This document shows, one piece after another, positions 248-36,113 of a stretch of DNA of 64,000 bases. The notes beneath the pieces were generated by a model. That model worked only from the letters and a program-made list of their open reading frames with translations. It was not told where the DNA came from and searched no databases. The position numbers and the translations under genes were made by a program. Within the stretch, counting starts at the first letter, position 1; every line of letters starts with the position of its first letter. Source of the stretch: Macrostomum lignano (Eukaryota); the NCBI GenBank assembly GCA_002269645.1, contig NIVC01001478.1, forward strand, positions 62,001 to 126,000, in the 5' to 3' direction.

Positions 248-282
<35 letters not shown>

Positions 283-395: not shown

Positions 396-426
<31 letters not shown>

Positions 427-446
427 GCTAGCTAGCTGACTGACTA
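11..446. repeat. (CTAA)n / (TTAG)n tetranucleotide microsatellite
   Basis: Directly visible CTAA reiteration with CTAG/CTGA variants; the same motif occurs on the opposite strand at 51995-52770. Confidence 0.97.
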
Positions 447-2425: not shown

Positions 2426-2739
2426 CTAGCAATCTTCGCCCCCCGTTGGGGGACATCTGTATAGAATCTCTGTTCTCTACAAGTAACAAAAAGACAGCCA
2501 AATAAAGCCTTCACAAAGACAACAGACAAACTGCTCAAATAAAGTGTAATGCAAAAAGAAAACATCCCAAGACAGCAAGCATCCCCCAGATTGCAAGCAT
2601 CCCCCAGATAGCAAGCATCCCCAAATAGTAAGCATCCACCAGACAATAAGTAGCTAGTGCTGCAATTTCCTTAGCTCTATAGTGGCTCCTTTAAAATTGG
2701 CATGACGCTTACTTTTACGTTTGAAATTGTGTATCTTTT

Positions 2740-3410
2740 ATGTTTGACATGGTGGCTCTTTTATGTTTGACATGGTGGCTCTTTTATGTTTGACATAGTG
2801 GCTCTTTAGTGTTTGACATGATGGCTCTTTAATGTTCGACATGGTGGCTCTTTAATGTTAGACATGGTGGCTATTTAATGTTTGACATGGAGTCACATAT
2901 ATGTTGGACATGGTGGCTCTTTTATGATTGACATGGTGGCTCTTTAATGTTTGACCTGGTGGCACCTCAATGTAATGATGGCTCTTTAATGTTAGACATG
3001 GTGGCTCTTTAATGTTAGACATGGTGGCTCTTTAATGTTAGACATGGTGGCTCTTTAATGCTCGACATGGTGGTCCTTTTATGCTTCACATGGTGGCTCT
3101 TAAATGTTTGACATGTTGGTCCTTTTATGTTTGACATGGTGGCTCTTTAATGTTTGACATGGTGGCTCTTTTATGTTTGACATAATGGCTCTTTAATGTT
3201 CTACATGGTGGCTTTTTTATTTTTGACATGGTGGCTCTTTAATGTTCGATATGGTGGTCCTTTTATGCTTGACATTGTGGCTCTTTAATGTTTGACATGT
3301 TGGTCCTATTATGTTTGACATGGTGGCTCTTTAATGTTTGGCATGGTGGCTCTTTGATGTTTGACATGGTGGCTCTTTAATGTTAGACATGGTGGCTCTT
3401 TAATTTTTAA
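2740..3410. repeat. 23-bp minisatellite (GACATGGTGGCTCTTTAATGTTT) in the E1 3' region
   Basis: Directly visible diverged tandem units. Confidence 0.93.
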
Positions 3411-6400
3411 CGTTTGTTAAACGTTTTGTTAAACGTTTTTGACGTTTGTAACGCAAGAATTTTTTGTATTTTTTCGCGAATAAACTTGAAAAGTACAAAG
3501 TGAAACTTATGAACATGGCATTAAAAGTACAACCGATATGTCACGTATACATAGCGTGTGCAATGGCTGCATGTGACCAGATGAGTTCCTTTAATACTCT
3601 ACGTTAGTCTATAGTCGCAGCCCTCGGATTCGCTCATTCCTGCCCTCAAATCCATAGTCAGAACAATCAGTTCGGCTCTATTTCCTTAGCCTTTGCGCTT
3701 TGCCACAGACTATTCATATTTGTTTCGCCAAAGATTAAGAAATGAAGTAAGACAAAAGCTTCATTCAGGGCCTTCGCCTTAGTTAAAATTGACATCTTGT
3801 GAGTTTCGTATATTATTCAACTTTCAATATATGGAAGACGAAGGCCCCGTCGCAAGTTGATGCAAATCGTTTTTTATAAGCTTACAGTTACAGGTGACTT
3901 GAGATATTTTTGATTTTTGAAAAAAAGACTGTCACTCGTAGTTTGCGTAAAAATCCATATACTAAAATTCACTCTAATGTTAAGTTTTTGCGAACCTTGG
4001 AAAACTAAAAACAAAATTGTTTCGTCTTTTGCATAAATTTGCGATATAAAATAAGTAAAGTTTTTACACGAATTATAATGAAATTTCAGGTGAAAAATAA
4101 AAGACAAAATTAACTGCTCATCAAAGATTGAATTCATTAAAAGCAGTGCAAAAGAAGGTTTGTTTCAAAAGTTACTTTCGGCTAATATGAAATTGCCTTA
4201 AAATACAAATTAACTGTAAAGTGCAAATTGACTGTAAAAATTAATACAATGAATAAAATAAGCCTAATTGAGCTTCAACATAAAGTTCATCAGCTATTAG
4301 CTCGTACTCACTGCCATGCAATATCTAAGCTTCGTTAGAAATGAGGTTGGGGCAATAAGTTTCCTGCGATTCTTTTAGGAATGAGAGCTATTGACAGCTA
4401 TTGCTTTAGAGAATGAGAGCTATTACTTAAGAGATATGGGGAAATAATTATTCTATTTTTCCTTAAAAATAAATGAATATAATTTCTAGCCTTTTGCATA
4501 AGGAAAATTATTGCTCACCCCTCATTTTTTGCGATAAATAAATTACTCTTCAGTGAGAACTTCTGGAAACACAACGTTTCTGGTCCTTGTTCCCGGAATC
4601 CGGACGCGAACATTTGCCGCGTTCTTTGCTCGTGACAGCGCCGTGTACAGCTGGCCATGCGTGAAGCAACCGACTGACAGGTCAATGCCAACTGTGTCCA
4701 GAGACTGTCCCTGCGACTTGTGAATCGTCAGGCAGAAACTCGGCTTCACAGGGAACTGCAGCCGCTTAAAACTGACGGGGAGGTCCGCATTGCTAGGAAT
4801 CAGCGGGATTCGCGGCAGAAGAATCTCGTCTCCCGTGAACTGGCCGGCGGCAATCTTGCATCTAAGCACGTTCTCGCCCATTGCGAGTATGATGAGCCGC
4901 GTACCATTGCACAATCGTGGCGGGTTGATGTTCCTGAGAAGAACTACTGGCATACCCACTTTTAGCCTCAGCAAGTGAATCGGAAAGTTCGGGGCATCCA
5001 GCTGGTTGAGCAACTCAGGCGGGAAGTGCGTAGCGGCATCCTCATCGGCCACACTGTCTATTGAGCGGTACTCCCGCAGGCTGCCGGGAAACATGCCCAG
5101 GCACGTCTCGTTGATGGCATCCACTGAGTCATTGTACGGCGCCAGGATCGCTCGGCTTGCAAAGTAGCCGTCCCTCTCCACTGACGCCTCAAACGATGGG
5201 TACACAAAATTTATCAGATCATTGAGCGGCGCCTCCGCAGAAATGATGATCTCAGCAGGAAGAGACACTTTCTCCTCTGCATCCTGCTCAATTGTTCCGG
5301 ATCCGATCTGGGGGAGTTAAAAGTCAAATATTTAAAACGCTAGACAGACTTTAAGCTAGGCATTCTTGAATAAGCCACAATTTTTTAAATGGAGCTCTCA
5401 ACACGAAAGAAACCGAATATCCTTAAATCTTCCAATAAATAAACTGATGAAAACAAACTTACCTGCTTGAGTAGCTCGGTGTATCTCAAATACGTTGCAG
5501 AATCGGAACTGCTCAGCAATCGGATGTTTCTTGTAAGGCGATGCCGCCGGAAAAATTTCCACAGTGGGGATCTGCTGACACACGCCATGACGCTGTTGGC
5601 TCGAGTCCCATGCACCACAACGGGCAGCAGCTGGCGAAAGTCCCCAGCGCAAACGAAAACCACTCCGCCGAATGGCACGTCCTGCTTCCGCACGTCTCGC
5701 AAGCACCGGTCGACGGCCTCCAAATCCTTCGGTTTGTCATAGAAATCTCGTCCCAGACAATTAGACGCACTGTCCGAAATACAGCGGCCTGTTTGGACTG
5801 CGCTCCAACAGCGCACACGTCTTTGCTCGAACGGATCGCCCGAATTGGTATCTTGAACCTGGCATAGACAAATAGTTTCACCATGCCTAACATATTTACA
5901 GCACACGAAATATTTACAACTGCTTTTTGAAATATTGACAATAAATTACTCACGTTGAATGCGCCGTCTGTCCACCTGGCAAAAGAGTCGCTGCGATTCC
6001 AGAAGCCGCAACGGCGAGGGCGACTTCACCCCGGCTGCGCACGAAGGCTAGCAGAACCTCTAGCAGGAAGGTCTTGCCAGTGCCAGCAGGTGCGTCCAGG
6101 AAGTGCAAGCCGCTGGTGCCGTCCACAAGATTCTGAGTCACGGACTCGTACACCGCTTTCTGCTCATCTGTCAGCATTGGTAAGCGCGCCTCAGTAATCA
6201 GTGCTTGCTCAACCGTATCAAACTGCATTGGTCCATCTTGAGGTGTCACGGAGGCCGCAGGCAGGCCGTACTCTGGCAGGCTTCTCCCGCCCATGGAGAT
6301 CAGCATGCTCTGAAGCTCACGCAGCGCCAGGTCAGTAATCTCCTCGGTGCTCAAGTCTCGGTGGTGGAACCGCAGGTCCTCGCTGAGATCCTCGGCAAAA

Positions 6401-9400
6401 CTGCACCAGAGGTCGCTGCCATCCTCAGGCTCACCCCATATGAGAATTACGGCCAGAAGATGTCTCAGGGCTCTTGGCATTCTTGACTGAACGGCCTCAG
6501 CTAGACACCGCCGCCAGTGATCATCTCGCTGCAGCAGGCCAAGGGCCATGCAAGCAGCCTTGGCGCTCGGATGCACAACGCCGTCCACGGTCTGCAGCGC
6601 CTCGAAGCTAGTCGGTCCCCTAACATTCAAAAGGAGCATTCGAACATAAAATAAATCACCTGCTCTTGGACTCACCGTGTACATGCGTGCAACGTTTTTG
6701 TTCCGCACTACACCCGGATGGCCATCGACTCGCACACCCTGCTTGGCCCGCCGCCACTCTCTTTCGCTGGAGTGCCACACAAAGTAGGACGGCACCTCCG
6801 TGTAGAGCAAGGACCCAGCAAATTCGTCAATACGGCACAGCTTGAAAAATGCCGTCAACGTCGAATCCTTCGGCGTTCTCGCTTTTGCTCTTGCGGTCCC
6901 CTCGTTGAAATACACGAGCTGCTCTTCCGACTTGTGAACGCAGAGTCGGATGACCGCCGGAAACCTGTTGTGCACCTGATCAGAAAGTGGAAGGAAAATA
7001 TACAGCCTTTAAGTTTCGATGGAAATTCAATTTATACTATGACGAGGTTTCACAGCTCTGGTTAAAATGAGCCAATAATAATTAGAATGCGAATTACTTC
7101 AAAGCCCAAGATGGTATTCACGGCTTCCATTGGACCAATGTAGCGCGCGGACAGGTACTCCTTAATCTCATCACGCCGCGGCTCATTTCGTGTCGTTTGC
7201 GTCGGCTGCTGGTTACCCACTGCCTGCTCTCTCGGTTCAGTAGAATTCCTATTGGCATCGACTTTGAACGTCGCCATGTCGCCACCCTTTAACAGGTACT
7301 TGATCACGTACTTGACCGACTTCACAGTGGCGCAAACTTCGACGTTCAAGTGGCACGCAAACTGGAGCAACAGGTCAGGGCTGTACGGAACGACCCACCT
7401 GTTTTAATGAAAAAATAATATCATTAACTTTCAGAAACAAAAGCTGCAATGCACAACTAAGCAATATATTAGCGTTTGAACTTCCCTGTTGTCCATGCGA
7501 ATGCTCCGGCCTTTGAACAGTTTGTCCACTGTAAATCCGCCCATCTCAGGCGATAGTCTGCGGTACAGTGGGTAGCCAGTATCGCTGGTCAGCGTCACCT
7601 GCTGGAACTCTTTCGGAAAGCCCTTGCTGCATTCGCCATTCTCCATGCAAGGACACGCCGGATTCTCCTTGCCGCAGGGGCCATGGATCATGTGCGTCTT
7701 CACCAGCTCATACAGCACAGGCTGCTGCTCTGGGTCCGGAATCTCGGCAGACACGATGTCATCGTATCGGTCCGGAGTCACTCGCTGACCGCTCACGAGC
7801 CACAGCAGAAAGTGCACATGAGGAAGACCTGGAGCGTCAAAAAAGTATTAAAAAATATCACAAAACCTTTGTAAATCTAAATTGTAATAAATCTTAAAAC
7901 TTTGATTCTTGCAAGTCAGAATTTTTACTCACCACGCTTCTGGTACTCCAGTGAGCAAACGTGAGCGGCCTCTTTCCCATAGCGCTTGGTCAACTGGGCC
8001 AGAAGAGCTTTCTTCTTCATTTCAAAGACTCGGCTAACAATGTCCGGCCGGTCTTCTGCCCGCTGTCCAGGCAGCAGCTGAGCGCTGATCTCCGGCCATT
8101 TCGGATTGCACGTTGCGGTGACAAACAGGTCCGGCTTACCGAACTTGTGAACATAGGTCATAGCGTCCTGTAGCCTCTCCATCAGGTACCTTGGCCCGCC
8201 AACGAAGCTCGAAGACAGAAGCACATGCGCGGGCTTGCCTATGTCACTCGGATCTCTGTCGGTAGACCTGCCATCAGCTGCAAACAGAGCGTCCCGCAGA
8301 CCGCTGTATGTCTCGCTGCGCAGGTCCTGCTGATGGGTCCGCAAATACAGCAGCCTCTCTGCCTCAATCTTGGCACACATGTCCACCAAGTACTGCTGAA
8401 ATAATCTTCGGCCATAGTGCAGCACACTGAACTGGCCCGCTCGCACCATGATTTCGCTCGCATAGTATTTCATGGGCGTCAATTTCTTGCCATTACTCAT
8501 CAGCAACTCTGGGTGCCAGCCATCTTCGCCATTCGGGAACAGCAGCACATACTCCAGCGGGTCATATGAGCGGTGCGTCTCGCTGATTCTCTGGGAACCG
8601 CCACCACGCAGTTGAATCACGACGTCCCGACTGGCCGGTGTGTTCTCATTGTCCTCCACAATCAGGATACCGACCTCGTTCGCCGTAGGCAAGTTGTAGC
8701 GCCTGATTTTGAACGGAGTTTGTGGGATACAGAGTCTGTACAAATTGGATAATTGGATAATTTATTACGCAAAATATCTTATTAGAATGTCTTGCAGACA
8801 TACCGAATGTGTTCCCCAGATGGTCGACGGTCAGGGTGAATTACGATTCGCGCATCTCCCAACTCCGGATCTTGACTGATTCGATGAGCGACTGCCCTCA
8901 GGCTGCGGACATAGCCGTTGCACTCGTGAAGCAGCGTCTGCAATAGCTCCAGTAGCTCCGGCTTCACCTTCTGGCTGAGACTCTGGCGGCTTTCAAGTTC
9001 GCGATCATTGAAATACACCTGCCAGCCATGGGGCTCAGCTGAATCCTCTGCAAACAGCGGCGCCGTGTTGTGATGCAGCCTGGCACCAACCGCAGTTTGG
9101 CACCCAGCGATGTCAGGTGCAGCGCCGAGTTGTAACTCCGAATGTTGGTCAGGAACTCGGCACTCATTCTGTGCCGCCCCAGGTACAGATCTGCCAGCAC
9201 TTGAGGCACGGTGCGGCTGGGCAGCTTCACCTTGCCTTTGGCGCAGCAGAAATTCCTCGTCTCAGAGCACCAAAGTAATGCACCGCATTGGTCGCATGCT
9301 CTGTCCATTGGGCCACAGTTATGGGCTGGCGCTTCAGGCCTGATAATCCGTTCTGGCCTGTGATTAGAAGGATTAGGATTAGGAAGGATTAATGGCAAAC

Positions 9401-9505
9401 AGTTTTCCCAGTTAATCTTTCAGTTTACAAAAAAATTTATTGGAATAAAACAACTTGAGTTCGATGACAAATAAATTATGATGACCAGTCACACCAATGA
9501 CCTAC

Positions 9506-10036
9506 CTCTCTTGAGCAGGTCTTGCGCCAAAATGACCTGCACTCTGCTGAGTTAATCTTGGCTCCTCTGCATCTACAATGGGCTCAGAAACTGGAATCGG
9601 ATTAGCAAATCGCAATGACTCATAATGCTCATGACGCAAAAGAATTCGGACGATTGCAATCGGTGGCTGCAAAGGGGACATACAGTACTGCAGTACAGTG
9701 CCGTTTTCTTGATAAATCACCAGATCAACATTAAAACAACGGCTTAAAAGCGGAACAACTTCATCAGGCACATATGTGCCTTCAGAAAAAGAGGAATCAA
9801 CAATGAAATCAGCATTTTCTGGCAAAACAAAGCCTTGTTCAATCAATTCTGGCATAATCTGCACTACACGGCTCGTCAGCTCGTGTCTTAAAGATGCCGC
9901 ATCGGTCTCAAGTGGAGTGCCCTGCAACTGATCACAGACTGCATAAAAAAAACAGTTCCCATCACCAGGAATGCGAATTATGCGCAACGCATCAAAAGGT
10001 ACCACAGACGGTGTGGCCAACTCACTACTATCAAAC
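9506..10036 (-). CDS. RepHel exon 2: OTU-like cysteine protease domain
   Basis: IPGDGNCFFYAV catalytic Cys box and HEHYESL His box; both flanking introns are phase 2 with GT-AG. Confidence 0.85.
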
Positions 10037-10322
10037 CTGGAATATAGGAAAAAAATTATACACAACTTCATTTGCCGGTAATTAAAGTAGTGACGAATAA
10101 ATTTTATGCTATTCTATACTGATCTCTTAAATAAAACTCTTGGAAAGCAATCGACTTGAAAAGATGAGAAAAAATGCACGAAACAGATTCCAGTTTTTAA
10201 TTATATGCCCAAGTACCAATAAAACATCAGCTAAGATAGAAAATACCCCGAATTAGGCACAAAGGGCACTTGGATTTTATATAGCTATAAAATATATAGC
10301 TCCAATTAAAATGTCATCCTAC

Positions 10323-10813
10323 CTGCCAGCCGACACTCCTCGACGGCGAATTTGCTCGGCTTCCACTCGAGCTCTTCGTTGCTCTTCGGTTTCTGAAGCG
10401 CGTCGCTTCTCCGCACGAGTTCTGTCTCCAGATCTACGCTCTTCTCGCTGAGCGTCTGTTTCCGTTGCCCTTCGCTCAGCATTTTCCTGCCGGAGTCTCG
10501 TCAGGCGCTCTTCTCGCTGAGCGTCGGTTTCAGTTGCCCTTCGCTCAGCATTTTCCTGCCGGAGTCTCGTCAGGCGCTCTTCTCGCTGAGCGTCGGTTTC
10601 AGTTGCCCTTCGCTCAGCCTCCTGCTGCCGGTGTCCAGCCAACCGCTCTTCTCGCTGCGCGTCAGTCTCCATGGCCGTTCGCTCATTCTTCTGCTGCCGC
10701 AGTTCAGCCAGCCGCTCCTCTCGCTGAACGGCACTCTCTTGCTGACGCTTCTTCTTGGCATCTCTGCTCTTCTTCAATGCGCTGGTGCCACGTCGAGCCA
10801 TATTGGAATTCAA
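10323..10813 (-). CDS. RepHel exon 1: basic N-terminus with 23-aa STPR-like repeats (ETDAQREERLTRLRQENAERRAT)
   Basis: Repeat period is 23 aa / 69 bp with an ET..QRE.RL pattern, matching the STPR DNA-binding repeat type. Confidence 0.75.
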
Positions 10814-12599
10814 ATTGAAAGATAAGAATTTTGAGTGATAATGAAAAGAAAGGATAGTAAGGGTTGTGTGCGAGAAAAGAGAAAGGTATGAAGTCTATAA
10901 TGTCACGCGTTTTAAACTCAGCAACCACCCAATCCCAAAAAGCTGGACACCATTTGTACACTGTTAGACTGTCAGTGTGTACAGCAAGCCTAAATTCTCT
11001 CCAATACCCGCCTGCTAATTGGTCAGGACTCTTTTTATTATTCAATACTCTCTCTCAAACACCTAACTCTAACTCTCCTATGTGAAAGGATTCAGATAAA
11101 TTTTCTGAAGGAGGCGCAAGCCTCAGTAGCCAATGTACATCTATCTCTGTGGCACTTTTGGACTTTTTTATAATCAGACGGTTTTATTACATTTTGGAGG
11201 GTCAGTCTCAAACATGGTTCGTATATTGTGAATCAATTAGATACTGTATATATGTGCATGTATTTCACTCTCTCACTCTCCCTCTCTCCAGCATTTAAAG
11301 TTAGTTTGTCAATTGTGCACGGGAAGATTTTATAATGTACAATCTTTTCTCGCAGTCTACATTTATAGTTCTCTAGCCTGGCGACAAAAAAATACTACTT
11401 TACTGGGCGCTGCAAAGTTTAATTCCAATCAGAATGGCTCACAGTAGGAAGTTCTGCTTGACCCTTGCAGAAAGGCATGTGTGTTATTCGAATATTCGCG
11501 CTTCTTCTATGCTTTACAGGAACTTTTCATGCTTAAAATGACACTTCTTTTACGATTTTTATGACACTTGTGGTTCTGAATTAGTAAGCCTCGACGCTAG
11601 CATTTTTTAGGTTTTTCATGACGCTTCTTTTATGTTTAACAAAAATTACACTATAAGATGAGCACGAAGCAGTTATGACATAATCAATTTTTCAATCGGT
11701 CAGTATGGTTACGCAGTCTAAATCAAGTCTCGTAATATGCTTCTACACAGTGTTTTCAACACTGTGACGCAATTCAAGGCGGAGGTACAATTCAGCTGTT
11801 ATGCAATCTTTATCACAATCAGAATTCAGTCAGTCAGTTTTTTCTCTAGCATTTTTACAATGCATTTCAGGTCGAAAGAGCTGCTTGACCTTTGCAAAAA
11901 AGCATGTTTTTCGAATATTTAATCCCTTTAAAATTGAGCAATTTCTTAGCCAAGATGCATGTACCGTCCCAGGAAAATTTCTGATCGAATGGTGCAAGTT
12001 GGAAGAAAATCGGTTGAGCCATTTTTTCTGAAATCTATCGCATACCTACCCACATACATACAGACAACTCATTTTTAGTATATTGGACTAGCCATTTAGC
12101 CCCCCGCTGGGGAGCCCTAAAATGACACCAATTGGTTTTTATTTTGACACAAGAGTAACCTTACTATAATTATCCAAAATGTTGATTTCCATTAATCAAA
12201 AAATTACCTTTTCTCATTTTGGCAAAAATAAATTGCCATGAATCAGAACTTTTATCAGCCAAAAAAGTTTCCTTCATCAGCCCAAAACCCTTTCTCAATC
12301 AGCAAATAGTGCTGATCCTTTCAAGCACAAACTCTTAGTGCATATCGTCGCTGGCCGGGGGCATATTCTTATCCGCAGCAAATATGCAAATCATTGACGG
12401 CCTTAGACCCTCTCTTTTAATTAGCCTAAATCAAAGAATGAAACCTTTAATAAATGCGCTGGTATTTCCTATTAGCAGAAATCAGCATCACTTGTGTGTA
12501 CTATTTCAATATCTGAACTACATGAGCTACTTCAGCCGTACTACCTGACTATCTGACAATCGCCCAACAACCTAACACCCCCAATAATTCAGCCATCGT

Positions 12600-14720: not shown

Positions 14721-15939
14721 TATTTATTCTCGACAGACCGCTTCTTTTATGGTTGACATGATGATTCTTTTGTCGCTTTTTCTTGTGTTGAGTTTTCTTC
14801 TGTTTAAAGTAGCATTTATTAAAAACTTACAGTGGTTTACCATCACTTTAGCAATGGTTTACCATCACTTTAGCAATGGTTCACCAGCAGTTTAGCAATG
14901 GTTCACCAGCAGTTTAGCAATGGTTCACCGGCACTGTTCCGCAAAATCTGGGAGCAGATGGCTACTGATCTCCATATGCTTCTCAATAATCGAAACCATT
15001 TGAAATGTTTGCAACTTGCAGTTTAAAATTGATTTGCAATTCTCTTGCATATTTATTAATTCATTGTACGTCAGATTAGCACTGCTCACCCAGATTAGAC
15101 CCTTTGAAAATTAGTACTTACAGCAGATTAGCACTGCTCTAGAAGACTAACGCAGCCCCAGCAAAAGTATCTTTAAATTTAAGTGTTTAACATCTCCATG
15201 AATCTGCATAGGATGCAATCATTATTGTCACAGGTCACAAAGATAAATTCGCTGCTTCAATGCAGGCTCGAACTGCTGACATCAAAGCATTCTGTTTGCT
15301 TCTGCTTGATACTGCCTGCCTACTGCGGCTATTGTGCCTATTGACATGTGGTCGAAATAATCTAGTTTAGCAACTTCAGCCGTTTGAAGTTAACCCCCGG
15401 AAATCGGCATTTATCCCCACAACAACCTGAAATTATCCCTTCATCTAATCCCGCAAAAAGACTGCAGTTATTTCTTAGCAGCCGGCATTTATCATCCACT
15501 TTGCATTTTAAAACTTTTATTAAAATTAAGAATGCATACCCTCAGCGGCATAGAATAGTCCCCTTAGCCAAAAATATTTCACTTAGCAGCCGCAGAAATC
15601 CCCTAAACAACTTGTACTTAATCTTCCACAGTAAATATCCACTCAAAACTCAATAGTTAGTTATAAGCCTCAGAAGTCTGCCACTATCCTCTAATTAGTC
15701 CGCAGTTTTCCCTCTCAGCAGTCTGCAGCTATACGCTCATACGTCTGGAGGAACTACCTCAGCAGTTTGCAGTTGTTTCCCCTTTGCAATCTGCAATGAT
15801 CCCTTCGACAGTCTGCAGTTCCCCTCAGCAGTCTGCAGTCATTTCATTTTCAGTCTACAACTGTACCATTAACGATTTTCATTCATTCTCTCAGCAGCCT
15901 GCAGTTCTCCTCTCGGCCGGCTCCTCAGTCTCCTCTGCA

Positions 15940-17911: not shown

Positions 17912-18260
17912 CTAGCTAATTAGAGCTGGCTGCCAGCAGCCAGAATAATTTTTTATTGCCCCCCTTTAGGTGGAGCGGAGTGAGTTTTCTTATCAGTTGG
18001 CTCTGGCGCAATCAATTAAAATTGGCAGTGAAGTTTCTGGCTGATAAAATTTGCATTGAAAAAGGCCATTTAAAACAGTTTTTCGAATATTTAATCCCTT
18101 TAGCATTGAAGCAGAATAAAGAAATTTTAACCGTCTTCTTTCCAGACAATTTTGAATCTTTTGGCGAAAACACGATCAAAATCGGTGAAGAATTGCGATC
18201 TCTAGAGCGTTATGGACAAGCATTCAAACATACAAACCTTAGAGATTTAGTATATTTAGA
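17912..18260 (-). mobile_element. Helitron E3, 349-bp miniature element
   Basis: 5' TCTAAATATACT at 18260; perfect 8-bp hairpin CTGGCTGC-TG-GCAGCCAG, then 10 nt, then CTAG ending at 17912. Confidence 0.85.
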
Positions 18261-23988: not shown

Positions 23989-24068
23989 TAACCCTAACCC
24001 TAACCCTAAACCTAACCCTAACCCTAACCATAACCCTAACCTAACCCTAACCCTAACCCTAACCCTAA
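23989..24068. repeat. Interstitial (CCCTAA)n / TTAGGG telomere-like tract, copy 1
   Basis: About 13 CCCTAA units with variants. Confidence 0.85.
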
Positions 24069-27000
24069 AGCATTGAAATTTCAGTAATTCTCTCTAAGAG
24101 TCATTATAGCACTACTACAGCATTATAGCGATTCCCTGCAAGCCTCGACATCGTAGGGATTCCCAAATGAATCTCTTAACTTCGACATGAAGCTTTTTTT
24201 ATTTTTATCAGCGATCCCTCCCCTGACGAGGCATCAAATAATGTAATAAAAAGTTTTCAATAAACTACATGTAGCTTCTGACTTTAGCCTTGAAATCTCA
24301 TTTATACCCCCATGAGCCTTGACATCTCAGCTATTCCCCCGTAAGCCTTGACATGTCAGCGATGGCCCCCAAAAAACCTTGACATCTAAAAAACCCCCTG
24401 TTAAACTTGAAACCCGATAAAATATAACCCTCAACCCACACCTGACCTAAACCTAACTTTAACCCAACCTAAAGTCTTGAAATCTCAGCAATTCTTCTCC
24501 CTAAGCCTTGACATTTTAGTGATTCCTTCTTTAAGAATCACAGCACTATAACGATTTCCACCAAGCTTTGACATTGTAAGCAATTCCCAAATGAATCTTT
24601 TAACTTCGACATGACTTTTCTTTTATGTATACATAGTGCCACTTTTATTTTTTACATGACTCTTCTTCTATCAGCGCCTCCCCCCGTGGCGAGCCAACAA
24701 AGAATGCAATAAAAAAATTGAGTAAAGTACATGAACTTTGAAGTAGCTTCTGATTTTTGCTTTGACATCTCAGAAACCCCCCCCCGTAATCTCAGTTATT
24801 CTCTGAGAGCCTTTACGTCTGTTTTTCTCCCCAGCACAGCATTATAGCTGCATTTAATTTTTACATGAACCCTTCATGTCTGACATGACGCTTCTTTTAT
24901 TCTACCATGATGCTTCCTTATTTTTTAAATGACGCTTCTATGATTTTTTACATGACGCTTCTATGATTTTTTCATGACGCTTCTATGCCTTTTACATGAC
25001 GCTTCTATGATTTTTTACATGACGCTTCTATGATTGTTTACATGACGCTTCTATGATTTTTCATGACGCTTCTATGCCTTTTACATGATGCTTTCATGAT
25101 TTTTACATGACGCTTCTATGATTTTTACATGACGCTTTAATGATTTTTTCATGACGCTTCCATGATTTTTTACATGACGCTTCTATGATTTTTTACTTGA
25201 CGCTTCTATGATTTTTTACTTGACGCTTCTATGATTTTTTACATGACGCTTCTATGATTTTTTCATGACGCTTCCATGATTTTTACATGACGCTTCTATG
25301 ATTTTTTACATGACGCTTCTATGATTTTTTACATGACGCTTCTATGATTTTTTTACATGACGCTTCTATGATCTTTACATGACGCTTCTTTGCTTTTACA
25401 TTACGCTTCTATGATTGTTTACATGACGCTTCTATGATTTTTACATGACGCTTCAATGATTTTTACATGACGCTTCAATGATTGTTTACATGACGCTTCT
25501 ATGAATTTTATATGACGCTTCTATGATTTTTACATGACACTTCTATGATTGTTTACATGACGCTTCTATGATTGTTTACATGACGCTTCTATGATTTTTT
25601 ACATGACGCTTCTACGATTTTTTACATGACGCTTCTATGATTTTTTACATGACGCTTCTATGATTTTTTATGACGCTTCTATGATTGTTTACATGACGCT
25701 TCTATGATTGTTTACATGACGCTTCTATGATTTTTACATGACGCTTCAATGATTTTTACATGACGCTTCAATGATTGTTTACATGACGCTTCTATGATTT
25801 TTTATGACGCTTCTATGATTGTTTACATGACGCTTCTATGATTGTTTACATGACGCTTCTATGATTTTTACATGACGCTTCAATGATTTTTACATGACGC
25901 TTCAATGATTGTTTACATGACGGTTCTATGATTTTTTACATGACGCTTCTATGATTTTTACATGACACTTCTATGATTTTTTACTTGACGCTTCTATGAT
26001 TTTTTACATTACGCTTCTATGATTTTTTCATGACGCTTCCATGATTTTTACATGACGCTTCTATGATTTTTTACATGACGCTTCTATGATTTTTACATGA
26101 CGCTTTAATGATTTTTACTTGACGCTTCTATGATTTTTTCATGACGCTTCTATGCCTTTTACATGATGCTTTCATGATTTTTACATGACGCTTCTATGAT
26201 TTTTACATGACGCTTTAATGATTTTTTCATGACTCTTCTATGATTTTTTACATGACGCTTCTATGATTTTTTACTTGACGCTTCTATGATTTTTTACTTG
26301 ACGCTTCTATGATTTTTTACATTACGCTTCTATGATTTTTTCATGACGCTTCCATGATTTTTACATGACGCTTCTATGATTTTTTACATGACGCTTCTAT
26401 GATTTTTTACATGACGCTTCTATGATTTTTTTACATGACGCTTCAAGATCTTTACATGACGCTTCTTTGCTTTTACATTACGCTTCTATGATTGTTTACA
26501 TGACGCTTCTATGATTTTTTACATGACGCTTCTATGATTGTTTACATGACGCTTCTATGATTTTGTCATGACGCTTCAATGATTGTTTACATTACGCTTC
26601 TATGATTTTTTCATGACGCTTCCATGATTTTTACATGACGCTTCTATGATTTTTTCATGACGCTTCTATGATTTTTTACATGACGCTTCTATGATTTTTT
26701 ACTTGACGCTTCTATGATTTTTTACTTGACGCTTCTATGATTTTTTACATTACGCTTCTATGATTTTTTCATGACGCTTCCATGATTTTTACATGACGCT
26801 TCTATGATTTTTTACATGACGCTTCTATGATTTTTTACATGAGGCTTCTATGATTTTTTTACATGAAGCTTCTATGATCTTTACATGACGCTTCTTTGCT
26901 TTTACATTACGCTTCTATGATTGTTTACATGACGCTTCTATGATTTTTTACATTTTACATGAAATGCAATACACGTTTTTTTAATAAGCTACATGTATCC

Positions 27001-27156
27001 TTGAAATCTTAAAAAATCTCCTGTCAAACCTTGTAAGCCTTGACATGTCAGTAATTCCCCCCCCACAAGCTTTAACATATCAACTTCCCCCCTTGACATC
27101 TCAGCAATGCCCCCAATAAGCCTTGGAAATCTAAAAATATCTGTCAATCAACCTTC

Positions 27157-27236
27157 TAACCCTAACCCTAACCCTAAACCTAACCCTAACCCTAACCATA
27201 ACCCTAACCTAACCCTAACCCTAACCCTAACCCTAA
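27157..27236. repeat. Interstitial (CCCTAA)n / TTAGGG telomere-like tract, copy 2
   Basis: Same sequence as copy 1, about 3.17 kb away, part of the module duplication. Confidence 0.85.
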
Positions 27237-29764
27237 AGCATTGAAATTTCAGTAATTCTCTCTAAGAGTCATTATAGCACTACTACAGCATTATAGCGAT
27301 TCCCTGCAAGCCTCGACATCGTAGGGATTCCCAAATGAATCTCTTAACTTCGACATGAAGCTTTTTTTATTTTTATCAGCGATCCCTCCCCTGACGAGGC
27401 ATCAAATAATGTAATAAAAAGTTTTCAATAAACTACATGTAGCTTCTGACTTTAGCCTTGAAATCTCATTTATACCCCCATGAGCCTTGACATCTCAGCT
27501 ATTCCCCCCGTAAGCCTTGACATGTCAGCGATGGCCCCCAAAAAACCTTGACATCTAAAAAACCCCCTGTTAAACTTGAAACCCGATAAAATATAACCCT
27601 CAACCCACACCTGACCTAAACCTAACTTTAACCCAACCTAAAGTCTTGAAATCTCAGCAATTCTTCTCCCCTAAGCCTTGACATTTTAGTGATTCCTTCT
27701 TTAAGAATCACAGCACTATAACGATTTCCACCAAGCTTTGACATTGTAAGCAATTCCCAAATGAATCTTTTAACTTCGACATGACTTTTCTTTTATGTAT
27801 ACATAGTGCCACTTTTATTTTTTACATGACTCTTCTTCTATCAGCGCCTCCACCCGTGGCGAGCCAACAAAGAATGCAATAAAAAAATTGAGTAAAGTAC
27901 ATGAACTTTGAAGTAGCTTCCGGCTTTTGCTTTGACATCTCAGAAACCCCCCCCCCCCGTAATCTCAGTTATTCTCTGAGAGCCTTTACGTCTGTTTTTC
28001 TCCCCAGCACAGCATTATAGCTGCATTTAATTTTTACATGAACCCTTCATGTCTGACATGACGCTTCTTTTATTCTACCATGATGCTTCCTTATTTTTTA
28101 AATGACGCTTCTATGATTTTTTCATGACGCTTCCATGATTTTTACATGACGCTTCTATGATTTTTACATGACGCTTTAATGATTTTTACTTGACGCTTCT
28201 ATGATTTTTTACTTGACGCTTCTATGATTTTTTCATGACGCTTCTATGCCTTTTACATGACGCTTTCATGATTTTTACATGACGCTTCTATGATTTTTAC
28301 ATGACGCTTTAATGATTTTTTCATGACGCTTCTATGATTTTTTACATGACGCTTCTATGATTTTTTACTTGACGCTTCTATGATTTTTACTTGACGCTTC
28401 TATGATTTTTTACATTACGCTTCTATGATTTTTTCATGACGCTTCCATGATTTTTACATGACGCTTCTATGACTTTTTACATGACGCTTCTATGATTTTT
28501 TACATGACGCTTCTATGATTTTTTTACATGACGCTTCTATGATCTTTACGTGACGCTTCTTTGCTTTTACATTACGCTTCTATGATTGTTTACATGACGC
28601 TTCTATGATATTTACATGACGCTTAAATGATTGTTTACATGACGCTTCTATGATTTTTACATGACGCTTCAATGATTGTTTACATGACGCTTCTATGATT
28701 GTTTACATGACGCTTCTATGATTTTTACATGACACTTCTATGATTGTTTACATTACGCTTCTATGATTTTTTACATGACGCTTCTATGATTTTTTACATG
28801 ACGCTTCTATGATTGTTTACATGACGCTTCTATGATTTTGTCATGACGCTTCTACGATTTTTTACATGACGCTTCTATGATTGTTTACATGACGCTTCTA
28901 TGATTTTTTACATGACGCTTCTATGATTTTTTATGACGCTTCTATGATTGTTTACATGACGCTTCTATGATTGTTTACATGACGCTTCAATGATTGTTTA
29001 CATGACGCTTCTATGATTTTTTATGACGCTTCTATGATTGTTTACATGACGCTTCTATGATTGTTTACATGACGCTTCTATGATTTTTACATGACGCTTC
29101 AATGATTTTTACATGACGCTTCAATGATTGTTTACATGACGCTTCAATGATTTTTACATGACGCTTCAATGATTGTTTACATGACGCTTCTATGATTTTT
29201 TACATGACGCTTCTATGATTTTTACATGACACTTCTATGATTGTTTACATTACGCTTCTATGATTGTTTACATGACGCTTCTATGATTTTTACATGACGC
29301 TTCTATGATTGTTTACATGACGCTTCTATGATTTTTTCATGACGCTTCTACGATTTTTTACATGACGCTTCTATGATTGTTTACATGACGCTTCTATGAT
29401 TTTTTACATGACGCTTCTATGATTTTTATGACGCTTCTATGATTGTTTACATGACGCTTCTATGATTTTTTATGACGCTTCCATGATTTTTACATGACGC
29501 TTTAATGATTTTTACATGACGCTTCTATGATTTTTTACATGACGCTTCTATGATTTTTTACATGACGCTTCTATGATTTTTTACATGACGCTTCTATGAT
29601 TGTTTACATGACGCTTCTATGATTGTTTACATGACGCTTCTATGATTGTTTACATGACGCTTCTATGATTTTTCGCATGACTATTCTATGATTTTTTACA
29701 TGACGCCTTTAGTCCTTTAATTTATTATTTTTTAATAAAAGCTTTTAATAAAAAAATTTACTAC

Positions 29765-29820
29765 TAAGATTCGAACCCAGGTCGCTGCATTAGCAGTCCA
29801 GTCTGTTAACTTCTAGGCTA
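29765..29820 (-). ncRNA. tRNA-derived remnant (A box, anticodon-like arm with GCT, B box) in the Helitron 5' region
   Basis: Minus strand TAGCCTAGAAG (A box) ... CTGGA-CTGCTAA-TGCAG ... CTGGG-TTCGAAT-CTTAG. A more degenerate copy lies at ~33548-33602; related B boxes at ~16300 and ~16910. No acceptor stem seen. Confidence 0.5.
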
Positions 29821-30279
29821 GATCTTATCGAATTTATAAGTGAAATTGTAGCACTTATATAATTCAACACTCACTCACGAAGCAGTTATGACATAATCAA
29901 TTTCCCAGGCAAGTCAGTATCAGTCTCAATTAAAGTTGACAATATGGTTACGCAATCTAAATCAAGTCTGGTGCTACGCTTCCACACTGCATTTTCAATA
30001 CTGTGACGCAATTCAAGTTGGAGTTACAATTCAGTTATGATGCAATCTATTTCAGAATCAGAATCAACCAGTCAATTTTTTCTCTAGCATTCTTACAATG
30101 CATTTCAAGTCGAAAAGTTTGCTTGAACTTTGCAAAAAAGCATGTTTTTCGAATATTTAATGCCTTTAGCATCGAGCAATTTCTTAGCCACGATGCATGT
30201 ACCGTCACGGGAAAATTTCTGATCGAACAGTGCAAGTCTCATGAAAATCGGTTAAGCCATTTTTTCTCTAATCGATCAC

Positions 30280-30312
<33 letters not shown>

Positions 30313-30599
30313 CACAGACAGACCATTTTTAGTATATAGGAAGCAATCTAGTGCGGCCCCCCTTCGGGGCGCCCAATAAGAAAGGAGCAAAAATAGTTCA
30401 TGGAAAACAATAAAAAAACACATTTTCTTAAACACTAATTCCTTCTTCACATTTTAAAAATCACCTTATTCGTGTAAAATTGTCACGGACTAAGATGTTT
30501 GCAAAATTAAAAAATCACTTTTTCTCTAAAATTAACAAACAGTCAACAAAATATCGTTTCCCTAAATAGAAAATATTCCCAAGACAGCAAGCAACCCCC

Positions 30600-31090
30600 T
30601 CCAAAAGTGAACAATCGCAGATAGCAAGCATCCTCTAATGCTCATAGCAAGAATCACCACAGATAGCAAGCATCTGCAGATTAGCAAGCACCCCCCAGAT
30701 ATTATAGAAGCATCCACCCAGATAGCAAGCATCCACTCAGATAGCAAGCATTCTGCAGATATCAAGCACCCCCAGATATTATAGAAGCATCCTGCAGATA
30801 GCAAGCACCCCCCAGATATTATAGAAGCATCCACCCAGATAGCAAGCATCCACTCAGATAGCAAGCATCCTGCAGATAGCAAGCACCCCCAGATATTATA
30901 GAAGCATCCACCCAGATAGCAAGCATCCTGCAGATAGCAAGAATCCCTAAATAGCAAGCATCCTGCAGATAGCAAGAATCCCTGAATAGCAAGCATCCCT
31001 GGATAGAAAGAATCCCATGCATGTAGCCAGTACCCCCTCTCCCAAATAGCAAGTATCCCCCCTCGAGAGCAAGCATCCACGAGACAGCAA
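30600..31090. repeat. Degenerate GATAGCAAGCATCC repeat in the E5 3' region
   Basis: Visible; short homologous copies at 2570-2645 in E1. Confidence 0.85.
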
Positions 31091-31214
31091 GTAGCTAGTG
31101 CAAATGTTACTTCCGCTAATGCAATAATCGCTTTCTCAGGTTGTGCAACAATCCACGTCTCAGCGAGCGCAATAATCTCTTTTTTAGACAGCGCAGTAAT
31201 CAGCTTCTCAGCTA

Positions 31215-33475
31215 GTGCAATAATCCTTGGTTTATTAATAGCAATAATCCTTGATTAATCAAGTGCAATAATCCTTGGTTTATCAAGTGCAATAATCCTT
31301 GGTTTATCAAGTGCAGTAATCTTTGGCTTATCAAGTGCAATAATCCTTGGTTTATCAAGTGCAATAATCCTTTGTTTATCAAGTGCAATAATCCTTGGTT
31401 TATCAAGTGCAATAATCCTTGGTTTATTAAGTGCAATAATCCTTGGTTTATCAAGTGCAATAATCCTTGGTTTATCTAGCGCAGTAATCCTTGGCTTATC
31501 AGGTGCAATAATCCTTGGTTTATCAAGTGCAATATTTGTTTATCAAGTGCAATAATCCTTGGTTTATCAAGTGAAATAATCCTTGGTTTATCAAGTGCAA
31601 TAATCCTTGGCTTATCAACTGCAATAATCCTTGGTTTATCAAGCGCAGTAATCTTTGGCCTATCAAGTGCAATAATCCTTGGTTTATCAAGTGCAGTAAT
31701 CCTTGGCCTATCAAGTGCAATAATCCTTGGTTTATCAAGTGCAATAATCCTTGGTTTATCAAGTGCAATAATCCTTGGTTTATCAAGTGCAATAATCCTT
31801 GGCTTATCAACTGCAATAATCCTTGGTTTATCAAGTGCAATAGTCCTTGGTTTATCAAGCGCAGTAATCCTTGGCCTATCAAGTGCAATAATCCTTGGCT
31901 TATCAAGTGCAATAATCCTTGGTTTATCAAGTGCAATAATCCTTGGTTTATCAAGTGCAGTAATCCTTGGCCTATCAAGTGCAATAATCCTTGGTTTGCC
32001 AAGAGCAATAATCCTTAGTTTATCGAGTGCAGTAATCCTTAGTTTTCCAAGTGCAGTAATCCTTGGTTTATTAAGAGCAATAATCCTTGGCTTATCGAGT
32101 GCAGTAATCCTTGGTTTGCCAAGAGCAATAATCCTTGGTTTATCAAGTGCAATAATCCTTGGTTTATCAAGTGCAATAATCCTTGGTTTATCAAGTGCAA
32201 TAATCCTTGGTTTATCAGATGCAATAATCCTTGGCTTATCAACTGCAATAATCCTTGGTTTATCAGATGCAATAATCCTTGGCTTATCAACTGCAATAAT
32301 CCTTGGTTTATCAAGTGCAATAATCCTTGGTTTATCAAGCGCAGTAATCTTTGGCCTATCAAGTGCAATAATCCTTGGTTTATCAAGTGCAATAATCCTT
32401 GGTTTATCAAGTGCAATAATCTTTGGTTTATCAGATGCAATAATCCTTGGCTTATCAACTGCAATAATCCTTGGTTTATCAAGTGCAATAATCCTTGGCT
32501 TATCAAGTGCAATAATCCTTGGTTTATCAAGCGCAGTAATCTTTGGCCTATCAAGTGCAATAATCCTTGGTTTATCAAGTGCAGTAATCCTTGGCCTATC
32601 AAGTGCAATAATCCTTGGTTTATCAAGTGCAATAGTCTTTGGTTTATCGAGTGCAGTAATCCTTAGTTTTCCAAGTGCATTAATCCTTGGTTTATTAAGA
32701 GCAATAATCCTTGGTTTATCGAGTGCAGTAGTCCTTGGTTTATTAATATCAATAATCCTTGAATAATCCAGTGCATTAATCCTTGGCTTATCAAGTGCAA
32801 CATTCTTTACTATCAAGTGCAATAATCCATGGCTTATCAAGTGCAATAATCCTTGGCTTATCAAGTGCAATAATCCTTGGTTTATCAAGTGCAATAATCC
32901 TTTGTTTATCAAGTGCAATAATCCTTTGTTTATCAAGTGCAATAATCCTTTGTTTATCAAGTGCAATAATCCTTGGTTTATCAAGCGCAGTAATCCTTGG
33001 CTTATCAAGTGCAATAATCCTTGGTTTATCAAGTGCAATAATCCTTGGTTTATCAAGCGCAGTAATCTTTGGCCTATCAAGTGCAATAGTCCTTGGTTTA
33101 TCGAGTGCAGTAATCCTTGGTTTTCCAAGTGCAATAATCCTTGGCTTCTTGAGTGCAGTAATCCTTGGTTTGCCAAGAGCAATAGTCCTTGGTTTATCGA
33201 GTGCATTAATCCTTGGTTTTCCAAGTGCAATAATTCTTGGCTTCTTGAGTGCAGTAATCCTTGGTTTGCCAAGAGCAATAGTCCTTGGTTTATCGAGTGC
33301 AGTAATCCTTGGTTTTCCAAGTGCCGTAATCCTTGGTTTATTAATAGCAATAATCCTTGATTAATCAAGTGCAGTAATCTTTGGTTTGCCAAGAGCAATA
33401 GTCCTTGGTTTATCGAGTGCAGTAGTCCTTGGTTTATTAATAGCAATAATCCTTGGCTTATCGAGTGCAGTAATT
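31215..33475. repeat. 24-bp minisatellite (TTTATCAAGTGCAATAATCCTTGG) inside E5
   Basis: Directly visible; explains the 8-aa periodic ORFs. Confidence 0.97.
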
Positions 33476-34160
33476 TAAGTGTTTTTATTTAGTCCTTTAA
33501 TAAAACCTTTTAATAAAAAATTTTACACTACTACTTTTAAACTACTTAGATTCGAACCTAGGTCGCTGCATTAGCAGTCTGGTCTGTTCAGCTCTAGGCT
33601 AGCTCTCATCGAAGTTATCAGTGATGTTGTACCACTTATATAATTCAACACTCACACCAAGTCAGGTAGAGTAAAAAGTCTCACGAAGCAGTTATGACAT
33701 AATCAATTTCTTAGGCAAGTCAGTACCAGTGTCTATGAAAGTTTACAATATGGTTACGTAATATAAATTCAGTACTGCGCTATGCTTTCACACTCAAAGC
33801 TGTGACGCAATTCAATTGAGTGTCAAATTCAGCCAGTACACAGACGATAAATAAAGTGTATTGTGATGCAATCTATTTCAGAATCAGAATTCAACCAGTC
33901 AGTTTTTCTGCTAGCATTCTTACGATGCATTTCAAGTCGAAAGAGCTGCTTGACCTTTGCAAAAAAGCATGTTTTTCGAATATTTAATCCCTTTAGCATC
34001 AAGCAATTTCTTAGCCACGATGCATGTACTGTCACGGGAAAATTTCTGATCGAACAGTGCAAGTTCGAAGAAAATCGGTTGAGCCGTTTTTGCTAAAATC
34101 GATCACACACACACACATACACACACACACATACCGACAGACCATTTTTAGTATATTGGA

Positions 34161-36050: not shown

Positions 36051-36113
36051 TCAATAGGATCGATGAATTGTTAATCTAGCATAAATTATAGAATGGATTT
36101 TTAGTATATTGGA

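What the first reader, a model, noticed from the sequence alone, without database searches (positions are those of the whole stretch)
2426..34160. Five different Helitrons stacked head-to-tail as a 31.7-kb chain with base-precise CTAG|TC junctions
Seen: on the minus strand a hairpin+CTAG 3' end abuts a TC 5' end with no intervening base at 12088|12087, 17912|17911 and 18261|18260; 30342|30341 is the same but lacks the final AG. Removing 2426-34160 fuses ...GTAATAGAATGGA to TTGCTAATCTAGC..., an intact 39-bp unit, so the chain sits at an A|T with no TSD. Established: Helitrons insert between A and T without a TSD, and rolling-circle replication of one donor gives concatemers of identical copies. 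Here the members differ in size (9,662, 5,824, 349, 12,081 and 3,819 bp) and content. Inference: each new element inserted at the A|TC formed by the 5' end of a resident element, i.e. self-targeting that builds a safe-haven chain. The alternative is read-through mobilisation of a composite.
Basis: partly seen in the sequence, partly recalled or inferred. Interest (0 to 1): 0.85.

Follow-up and report, generated by a model that had tools for sequence, protein, structure and literature searches.

The report
Five different Helitrons joined head-to-tail
In one copy of a flatworm (Macrostomum lignano) chromosome region, five different rolling-circle transposons sit end to start with base-level precision in a site that is empty in two near-identical sister copies; this is a long example of a pattern already seen as a pair in maize.

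Summary
On the minus strand five canonical Helitrons (3,819, 12,081, 349, 5,824 and 9,662 bp) abut 3' end to 5' end with no host base between them. The window is Macrostomum lignano contig NIVC01001478.1. Two other contigs of the same assembly carry the same flanks (98.4-99.8% identical) with an uninterrupted 39-bp array. The 31.7-kb block is therefore a recent insertion between A and T, with no duplication.

New points:
- The landing site, A|TCCATTCTATTA, matches the Helitron 5' end at 9 of 12 bases. Only 0.5% of A|T sites in a control stretch do as well.
- 64 equivalent repeat units in the window are unoccupied.
- Three of the four internal 3' ends are intact.
- The array starts right after a 16-nt 5'-end stub.

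Only the last member encodes the transposase, and its reading frame may be broken.

The best reading is that incoming elements were joined at the cleavable 5' boundary of a resident element. A single arrival of a ready-made composite is not excluded, because the genome-wide test could not be run here.

The model is not new. Du et al. 2008 described two unlike head-to-tail maize Helitrons and proposed the same explanation. Interest is moderate.

The parts
30342..34160 (-). E1, non-autonomous Helitron, 3,819 bp. 5' end TCCAATATACTAAAAATGG. Carries a 24-bp minisatellite (31214-33474) and 18-bp repeats. Has a 3' hairpin, but the end is ...CTAGATTGCT, lacking the final AG.
18261..30341 (-). E2, non-autonomous Helitron, 12,081 bp. 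5' end TCCTATATACTAAAAATGG. Contains about 10.6 kb of 23-bp satellite, with 3.2/5.8-kb internal segmental repeats each carrying about 13 TTAGGG units. 3' end: hairpin then GTAGATTGCTAG.
17912..18260 (-). E3, 349-bp mini-Helitron. Its first about 190 bp are 97.9% identical to E4's 5' end. Its own 3' end is GGCTGCTGGCAGCCAGC hairpin, then TCTAATTAGCTAG.
12088..17911 (-). E4, non-autonomous Helitron, 5,824 bp. 5' end TCT+TCTAAATATACTAAATCTC. Carries 29-31-bp minisatellites and has no ORF of 100 aa or more. 3' end: hairpin then CTAAATGGCTAG.
2426..12087 (-). E5, autonomous-type Helitron, 9,662 bp. 5' end TCCAATATACTAAAAATGAG. 3' end: CCCCCAACGGGGGG hairpin then CGAAGATTGCTAG. Has a 23-bp array in its 3' part.
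4546..8761 (-). RepHel transposase gene of E5, in several exon-like ORFs. Present: Helitron_like_N, HUH motif (PHVHF), two-tyrosine motif (KYVIKY), Walker A (GTGKT), PIF1 helicase, Pif1 2B and UvrD_C. Compared with the closest relative there is an 86-nt gap at 5952-5867 and a frame change near 5727.
9505..10894 (-). Upstream ORFs of E5. One has a weak OTU cysteine-protease match (9505-10113) and is conserved in the related Logan contigs. The other is an STPR-repeat ORF (10322-10894).
1709..2425 (.). 39-bp minisatellite, the part on the chain's 3' side (18.4 units).
34161..36053 (.). 39-bp minisatellite, the part on the chain's 5' side (about 48.5 units). The unit boundary A|TCCATTCTATTAC is the target and matches the 5' end TCCAATATACTA at 9 of 12 positions.
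36098..36113 (-). 16-nt Helitron 5'-end stub, TCCAATATACTAAAAA. It is identical to the start of E1 and E5 and is joined directly to the first (degenerate) 39-bp unit in the same phase as the insertion site. Present in all three paralogous contigs.
11797..11940 (-). About 145-bp 5' subterminal module shared by E1, E2, E4 and E5 at 88-93% identity. The other copies are at 33861-34005, 30034-30178 and 17616-17761. E3 shares only about 42 bp of it (18072-18113).

Best explanation
The block is a chain of five canonical (Helitron1-type) rolling-circle transposons of one family group in Macrostomum lignano. One is an autonomous-type element (E5). The other four are satellite-filled non-autonomous relatives.

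The most likely mode of formation is as follows:
1. A first element landed between A and T at a repeat-unit boundary that mimics a Helitron 5' end.
2. Later incoming elements were then joined at the 5' boundary of a resident element.
3. That boundary (host A | TC...) is the site the RepHel transposase itself nicks to start transposition. The same nick can serve as a target.
4. The free 3'-OH of the host A is joined to the incoming 5' TC, and the incoming CTAG-3'-OH is joined to the resident 5' TC.
5. This gives CTAG|TC with no host base and no duplication. Repeating the event gives a chain that grows at its 5' side, so E5 would be oldest and E1 youngest. E1+E2 possibly arrived as one unit, because E1 lacks a proper terminator.

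Shown: the anatomy, the precise junctions, the empty sites and the 5'-end-like target.
Inferred: the chemistry at the target, the in-situ stepwise build-up and the order of arrival.
For: - Termini, hairpins and junctions are base-precise.
- The members differ in content. They share only an about 145-bp 5' module and their terminal motifs, so they are not concatemers of one donor.
- Two paralogous contigs have intact 39-bp units at the site. The flanks are 99.7-99.8% identical on the left and 98.4-99.1% on the right.
- The target 12-mer matches the 5' end at 9/12 positions. The other A|T sites of the unit reach 6/12 or less, and only 0.54% of 3,127 control A|T sites reach 9/12.
- 64 intact copies of the same target motif in the two array parts are unoccupied, while one position holds five elements. 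That is hard to explain by the host motif alone.
- Three of the four internal 3' ends keep hairpin plus CTAG. In maize composites that moved as one unit, 99/100 internal 3' ends had lost CTAG (PMC3288121).
- The Helraiser transposase both forms and precisely cleaves RTS-LTS junctions in vitro (PMC5876387).
- The same model was proposed for a polymorphic maize pair in which single-occupancy alleles exist (PMC2267711).
Against: - The flanks differ from the empty copies by only about 0.2-1.6%. Five (or four) independent hits at one nucleotide would have to be very recent, whereas one arrival of a ready-made composite needs a single event.
- No intermediate allele (for example E5 alone) was seen. 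Only three copies of the locus exist in the accessible data.
- No other copy of the family could be retrieved, so there is no genome-wide excess to point to.
- A perfect 16-nt 5'-end stub 1.9 kb away has attracted nothing, although it is preceded by G rather than A.
- The 5'-end-likeness of the target is a single post-hoc observation.
- E5's transposase frame may be broken.
Confidence: 0.5

Rival explanations
1. A single composite arrived once. The chain was already assembled at a donor locus elsewhere. It was mobilised from E1's 5' end to E5's 3' end by reading through the internal terminators, then inserted once at this A|T. Chain formation itself would still need end-to-end joining at the donor.
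For: - The chain is absent from two copies of the locus that are 98.4-99.8% identical in the flanks, so one recent event is the most economical history here.
- E1's 3' end lacks the final AG, so at least E1 would read through into E2.
- Helitrons with multiple internal termini are common in maize (28.7% of helA elements; PMC3288121).
Against: - E2, E3 and E4 have intact hairpin+CTAG terminators. Three consecutive bypasses are unlikely, and maize composites almost always have damaged internal CTAG.
- No second copy of E5's transposase above 89% identity was found in the protein collection. The value of this is weak, because the window's own gene product was not returned either.
Confidence: 0.27
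2. The chain was imported by recombination rather than transposition. A chain lying in a long 39-bp array at another locus was copied here by ectopic recombination or gene conversion between arrays.
For: The occupied copy has about 67 array units. The empty copies have about 4 and about 14. The array here is therefore unusual and could have come along with the chain.
Against: - The unique flanks outside the array are collinear and nearly identical in all three contigs.
- Array length varies freely among copies anyway.
- No other 39-bp array locus was available to compare.
- This does not explain how the chain formed.
Confidence: 0.1
3. Assembly artefact. The long-read assembler joined separate Helitron copies through shared repeats.
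For: The region is extremely repetitive, with a 10.6-kb satellite inside E2 and many minisatellites. The genome is a neopolyploid with near-identical copies.
Against: - Misjoins occur inside shared sequence, not exactly at element termini. The junctions lie between unlike sequences and are base-precise four times in one orientation.
- The outer flanks restore an intact repeat unit.
Confidence: 0.05

Closest known systems
[quoted passage not shown] 2008, BMC Genomics 9:51; PMC2267711)
   Same: - Unlike elements in the same orientation.
- The CTAG of one is directly followed by the TC of the next, with no host A between.
[quoted passage not shown]
- Occupied and empty alleles exist.
   Different: - Maize has two members; here there are five.
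- Maize lines with a single occupant were found; here only full and empty copies are available.
- Here the first landing site resembles a 5' end and lies in a minisatellite next to a 5'-end stub.
- The host is a flatworm rather than a plant.
Tandem arrays of HeliBat in Myotis lucifugus (Pritham and Feschotte 2007, as cited in PMC2267711 and PMC5876387) and Helitron-derived tandem arrays in plants and Xenopus (PMC12001565)
   Same: Perfect head-to-tail RTS-LTS junctions in the genome.
   Different: Those are repeats of the same element and are explained by rolling-circle replication of one donor. Here the neighbours differ in size and content.
Maize Helitrons with multiple termini (Du et al. 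2009; Dong et al. 2011, PMC3288121)
   Same: - Several 5' and 3' ends lie inside one large block.
- There is a preference of Helitrons to insert near or in other Helitrons.
- A damaged internal CTAG (as in E1) lets transposition run on.
   Different: In maize 99/100 internal 3' ends have lost CTAG. Here three of four are intact and each is followed at once by a 5' end.
Helraiser circle junction (Grabundzija et al. 2016, 2018; PMC5876387)
   Same: The same covalent junction, CTAG joined to TC. The transposase makes it and cuts it precisely. It shows that the chemistry needed for end-to-end joining exists.
   Different: That junction joins the two ends of one element in an episomal circle. It does not join two different elements in a chromosome.
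IS608/IS91-type HUH transposons (from general knowledge and the introduction of PMC5876387)
   Same: These are single-strand HUH transposases without target duplication. In IS608 the target tetranucleotide is the same sequence that flanks, and is cleaved at, the left end. A resident left-end boundary is therefore itself a target.
   Different: They are prokaryotic, have no helicase domain and use defined tetranucleotide targets. They are an analogy only; nothing here tests homology of mechanism.

Membership tests
Canonical Helitron (Helitron1 type) | 5' terminus TC | tested here: met
   All five members start with TC: TCCA, TCCT, TCTAA, TCTTCTAA and TCCA, each before the ATATACTAAA core.
Canonical Helitron (Helitron1 type) | 3' terminus CTRR | tested here: met
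   E2-E5 end in CTAG. E1 ends in ...CTAGATTGCT without the final AG, so one of the five is an exception.
Canonical Helitron (Helitron1 type) | Short hairpin about 10-15 nt before the 3' end | tested here: met
   All five 3' ends fold into a 4-8-bp G+C-rich stem that ends 11-14 nt from the terminus. Energy z-scores are modest (-0.9 to -1.4), as expected for such short stems.
Canonical Helitron (Helitron1 type) | Insertion between host A and T without target-site duplication | tested here: met
   Met for the chain as a whole. The empty sites in L008 and L009 have an intact unit, GCAA|TCCATT. For the four internal members the original target cannot be tested.
Canonical Helitron (Helitron1 type) | RepHel protein with HUH motif, two catalytic tyrosines and a Pif1-like SF1B helicase | tested here: met
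   - E5 only: Pfam Helitron_like_N 3e-46, PIF1 1e-20, Pif1_2B 1e-16.
- The motifs PHVHF, KYVIKY and GTGKT are present.
- The reading frame is possibly broken at about 5950 and about 5727 relative to an 82-88% identical relative.
Helitron2 / Helentron | Short asymmetric terminal inverted repeats; insertion at TT or T(T/C); an endonuclease domain in Helentrons | tested here: not met
   - No significant inverted match between the first 40 nt and the last 80 nt (p = 0.05-1.0).
- The target is A|T.
- No endonuclease domain was found.
Rolling-circle concatemer of one donor (homogeneous tandem array) | Neighbouring units are copies of the same element | tested here: not met
   The members share only the 5' module and terminal motifs (80-93% identity). 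E3 and E4 share about 190 bp at 98%. Sizes and internal satellites differ.
Composite 'multiple-termini' Helitron that moves as one unit | Internal 3' ends have a damaged CTAG | tested here: not met
   Only 1 of 4 internal 3' ends (E1) is damaged. In maize the figure was 99/100.
Composite 'multiple-termini' Helitron that moves as one unit | The same ordered composite is present at several loci | not testable with these tools
   No tool here searches the M. lignano genome by DNA. Protein-based look-ups returned no further copy.
Heterologous head-to-tail Helitron pair (maize r1 type) | Unlike elements in the same orientation, with a CTAG|TC junction and no host base | tested here: met
   Four consecutive junctions of this type: two exact, one with three extra bases (TCT), and one lacking AG.

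The most novel reading that the evidence does not exclude
This Helitron family has programmed self-targeting. Its transposase prefers as integration target the very boundary it cleaves at a resident 5' end, or a sequence that mimics it. Copies therefore pile up as growing 'trains' in already occupied, harmless places. The satellite next to a 5'-end stub acts as the first landing pad. If general, this would give the first sequence-level target rule for a eukaryotic rolling-circle transposon beyond 'AT'.
Probability: 0.25. Interest if true: 0.7.

Novelty: new member of a known kind. Interest (0 to 1): 0.45.

Why it matters
How Helitrons choose their targets is poorly understood beyond the AT dinucleotide. 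A five-member chain was added very recently to one of three near-identical copies of a locus, and it sits at a site that looks like a Helitron 5' end. That makes a natural test case for the idea that the donor-end nick doubles as a target.

If the genome-wide test holds, three things would follow:
- It would explain why Helitrons cluster and why elements with multiple termini arise.
- It would show how large composite elements that shuffle sequence are seeded.
- It would suggest a simple assay: an LTS placed on a target plasmid.

If the test fails, the locus is still a clean example of a composite Helitron with empty-site proof in a flatworm whose Helitrons have not been described in the searchable literature.

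Tried and rejected
1. The 39-bp unit as a relic of a 3'-end|5'-end junction. Local alignment of the unit dimer against the four internal junctions is not better than shuffles (p = 0.11-0.69). Rejected.
2. Hidden termini inside the 12-kb E2. The 3.2/5.8-kb internal repeats carry TTAGGG runs but no hairpin+CTAG and no 5' motif. E2 is one element.
3. A nested plus-strand Helitron starting at 3953 (TCCATATACTAAAAT). No matching 3' end lies downstream. It is treated as an isolated 5'-end-like 15-mer.
4. The 39-bp array as the interior of a sixth full Helitron starting at the stub. There is no shared 5' module and no canonical 3' end. The only candidate is an A+T-rich 10-bp hairpin 48 nt before a CTAG that is followed by C. 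Not supported.
5. Finding other copies of the family:
   - Three protein searches and six contig look-ups gave only a 61%-identity M. lignano Helitron of another family (L002), 82-89% relatives without loci, and Logan contigs of 7.2 kb or less that do not reach the termini.
   - A metagenome scan with the 17-nt 5' end gave 120 chance hits, none preceded by CTRR.
6. Rebuilding the 859-aa annotated gene model by enumerating GT-AG introns. The aim was to look up identical copies. It found no solution with four introns, and the open search timed out.
7. tRNA and Rfam scans of the window found nothing.
8. Terminal inverted repeats: none.
Full report
**Source.** The 688-aa ORF at 41548-43614 (an amiloride-sensitive sodium channel) is encoded on NIVC01001478.1 of assembly GCA_002269645.1. 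Papers identify that assembly as Macrostomum lignano, and cluster members carry M. lignano names. The window corresponds to bases 62001-126000 of that 163-kb contig. The organism is a free-living, recently polyploid flatworm with a long-read assembly.

**Check of the observation.**
- The 5' core TATACTAAA occurs six times on the minus strand. Five are the starts of the five members and one is a stub at 36113.
- A strict 3'-end pattern (G6[CG]N3-14CTAG) occurs four times in both strands of the window. All four are 3' ends of chain members (E1, E2, E4, E5).
- E3 has a different hairpin (GGCTGCTGGCAGCCAGC), followed by TCTAATTAGCTAG.
- All five 3' ends fold into a short G+C-rich stem ending 11-14 nt before the terminus.
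- The sizes are 3,819, 12,081, 349, 5,824 and 9,662 bp.

Three nuances apply:
- E4's 5' end carries three extra bases (TCT) relative to E3's otherwise 97.9% identical 5' 190 bp.
- E1 ends in GATTGCT where E2 and E5 end in GATTGCTAG.
- The host T-flank TCCA equals E1's first four bases, so the outer boundary is ambiguous by up to 4 nt.

**What the members are.**
- E5 carries a RepHel gene. Pfam matches are Helitron_like_N (3e-46), PIF1, Pif1_2B and UvrD_C, plus a weak OTU match (E = 0.007, below Pfam's cut-off) and an STPR ORF upstream.
- The HUH motif (PHVHF), the two-tyrosine motif (KYVIKY) and Walker A are present. An 859-aa gene is annotated there.
- The ORF breaks largely coincide with those in 82-88% identical relatives from Logan assemblies, so they look like short introns. 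However, E5 has an extra 86-nt gap at 5952-5867 and a frame change near 5727. These may be real defects or assembly indels.
- E1-E4 have no coding capacity and are filled with minisatellites.
- E1, E2 and E5 share one 5' end type. E3 and E4 share another. E1, E2, E4 and E5 share an about 145-bp subterminal module at 88-93% identity, and E3 carries only a 42-bp piece of it. Otherwise the members are unlike.
- There are no terminal inverted repeats. These are canonical Helitrons of one family group and not concatemers of a single donor.

**Empty sites.** The channel protein and a 123-aa protein encoded at 727-1098 each lead to two further contigs of the same assembly, NIVC01001503.1 (L008/L011) and NIVC01002932.1 (L009/L012).
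- Both are collinear with the window on either side of the chain. Both lack the 31.7 kb.
- Both carry an uninterrupted 39-bp array, of about 14 and about 4 units, between the same flanks.
- The unique left flank (1,261 bp) differs by 1-3 substitutions. The right flank is 98.4-99.1% identical.
- The 39-mer obtained by fusing the two window flanks occurs in both empty copies.

The block is therefore a recent insertion between A and T without duplication, specific to one haplotype or homeologue.

**New features of the target.**
- The unit boundary used, A|TCCATTCTATTA, matches the family's 5' end TCCAATATACTA at 9 of 12 positions. The other nine A|T sites of the unit (both strands) match at 3-6 positions. 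Only 0.54% of 3,127 A|T sites in 36200-64000 reach 9.
- The window's arrays contain 64 further intact copies of this site, all unoccupied.
- The array starts immediately after a 16-nt stub identical to the first 16 nt of E1 and E5. The stub is joined to the first unit in the same phase (AAAAA|TCCATTCTAT) and is conserved in all three contigs.
- The idea that the 39-mer itself descends from a 3'-end|5'-end junction was tested and is not supported.

**Mechanism.** Three facts constrain it:
- Five elements sit at one nucleotide while 64 equivalent sites are empty. Either one event brought them all, or a resident Helitron end attracted the later ones. The host motif alone cannot explain it.
- Three of the four internal terminators are intact. 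In maize, composites that moved as a unit have lost CTAG at 99 of 100 internal 3' ends (PMC3288121). A transposase would have to ignore three good terminators to move this block from E1's 5' end to E5's 3' end.
- The flanks are nearly identical to the empty copies, so whatever happened was recent. That favours few events.

The chemistry for end-to-end joining is established. The Helraiser transposase forms precise CTAG-TC junctions and cleaves them precisely in vitro, and circles with this junction are transposition donors (PMC5876387).

I therefore favour insertion of incoming elements at the nick the transposase makes at a resident's 5' boundary (host A | TC). This keeps the canonical A|T target and yields CTAG|TC with no host base. 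I give this about 0.5. E1+E2 may have come as one unit because E1 lacks its terminator. Rivals are a ready-made composite arriving once (about 0.27), import by recombination between arrays (about 0.1) and misassembly (about 0.05).

**Comparison with what is known.** Du et al. 2008 found two unlike head-to-tail Helitrons in maize with the same G|T junction. They showed lines with both, one or neither element. [quoted passage not shown] Homogeneous tandem arrays are known from bats, plants and frogs. Helitrons with multiple termini, and a preference for inserting near or in other Helitrons, are known from maize. No paper in the searchable library describes Helitrons of M. lignano, or a chain of more than two unlike members. 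That library is incomplete, however. The finding is thus a long and unusually clean example of a known kind. The 5'-end-like landing site and the adjacent stub are its most interesting additions.

**Limits.** No tool here searches the flatworm genome by DNA. Protein-based look-ups gave no further copy of this family with its termini. The metagenome scan returned only chance hits. The genome-wide enrichment test, the search for intermediate alleles, the search for chains in other orders, and read-level validation all remain to be done. They are listed as next steps.

Noticed in passing
window 23988-24068 and 27156-27236 (minus strand reads TTAGGG): Two interstitial runs of about 13 vertebrate-type telomere repeats lie inside E2. 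Each is part of a 3.2/5.8-kb internal segmental repeat (18373-21130 matches 24199-26953 at 98% and 27367-29706 at 94%). The repeat also holds 30-bp repeats and the 23-bp satellite.
   Followed up: partly
window 36098-36119 (minus strand); also L008 ~4773-4794 and L009 ~4800-4821: A 16-nt Helitron 5'-end stub (TCCAATATACTAAAAA) is preceded by TCCCTG and AAGTAG. It is joined in phase to the first degenerate 39-bp unit and is conserved in all three paralogous contigs. It could be the footprint of an earlier element or the seed of the array. Unexplained.
   Followed up: partly
window 3953-3967 (+ strand): An isolated 5'-end-like 15-mer (A|TCCATATACTAAAAT) lies in inverted orientation inside the 3' part of E5, with no matching 3' end downstream.
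   Followed up: partly
window 5952-5867 and ~5727 (minus strand): E5's helicase region has an 86-nt gap and a frame change relative to the uninterrupted 486-aa exon of the closest relative (L003 3092-4552). The annotated gene (859 aa, window 5513-8500) stops early at 5513.
   Followed up: partly
window 12-447 and 51995-52769: Long (CTAA)n and (AGTT)n microsatellites are reverse complements of each other and lie about 51 kb apart. Both are also present in the paralogous contigs.
   Followed up: no
window 36000-64000: This gene-bearing stretch is unusually dense in minisatellite arrays: periods of 27, 47, 22, 161, 46, 48, 40, 7, 45, 37 and 19 bp, each 0.2-2 kb long. It holds the sodium channel gene, a sulfotransferase and an MFS transporter. 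None of the arrays is flanked by this Helitron family's termini.
   Followed up: no
window 41548-43614 vs L008 10001-11710 and L009 10001-10801: The sodium-channel gene is an intact 688-aa ORF in the window. It is annotated as 565 aa and 266 aa in the two paralogous contigs, although the DNA is 99.2-99.4% identical. L008 lacks a counterpart of window 43137-43305.
   Followed up: no
L008 5167-6327: The paralogous contig NIVC01001503.1 has about 1.2 kb not collinear with the window between 36493 and 36498, including an inverted match to window 38203-38426. This is a further structural difference between the copies.
   Followed up: no
L003-L007 (Logan runs SRR316284xx): An intact-looking relative of E5's RepHel (82-88% protein identity) is present in several independent sequencing runs of unknown species. 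It has the same exon-like ORF pattern plus a downstream ORF with a weak OB-fold match (Pfam REPA_OB_2, as in RPA) that E5 lacks.
   Followed up: partly
window 31476-33446 (minus strand): A 656-aa 'ORF' lies entirely within the 24-bp minisatellite of E1. It is an open frame created by the repeat, not a gene, and no gene is called there in the public annotation.
   Followed up: yes
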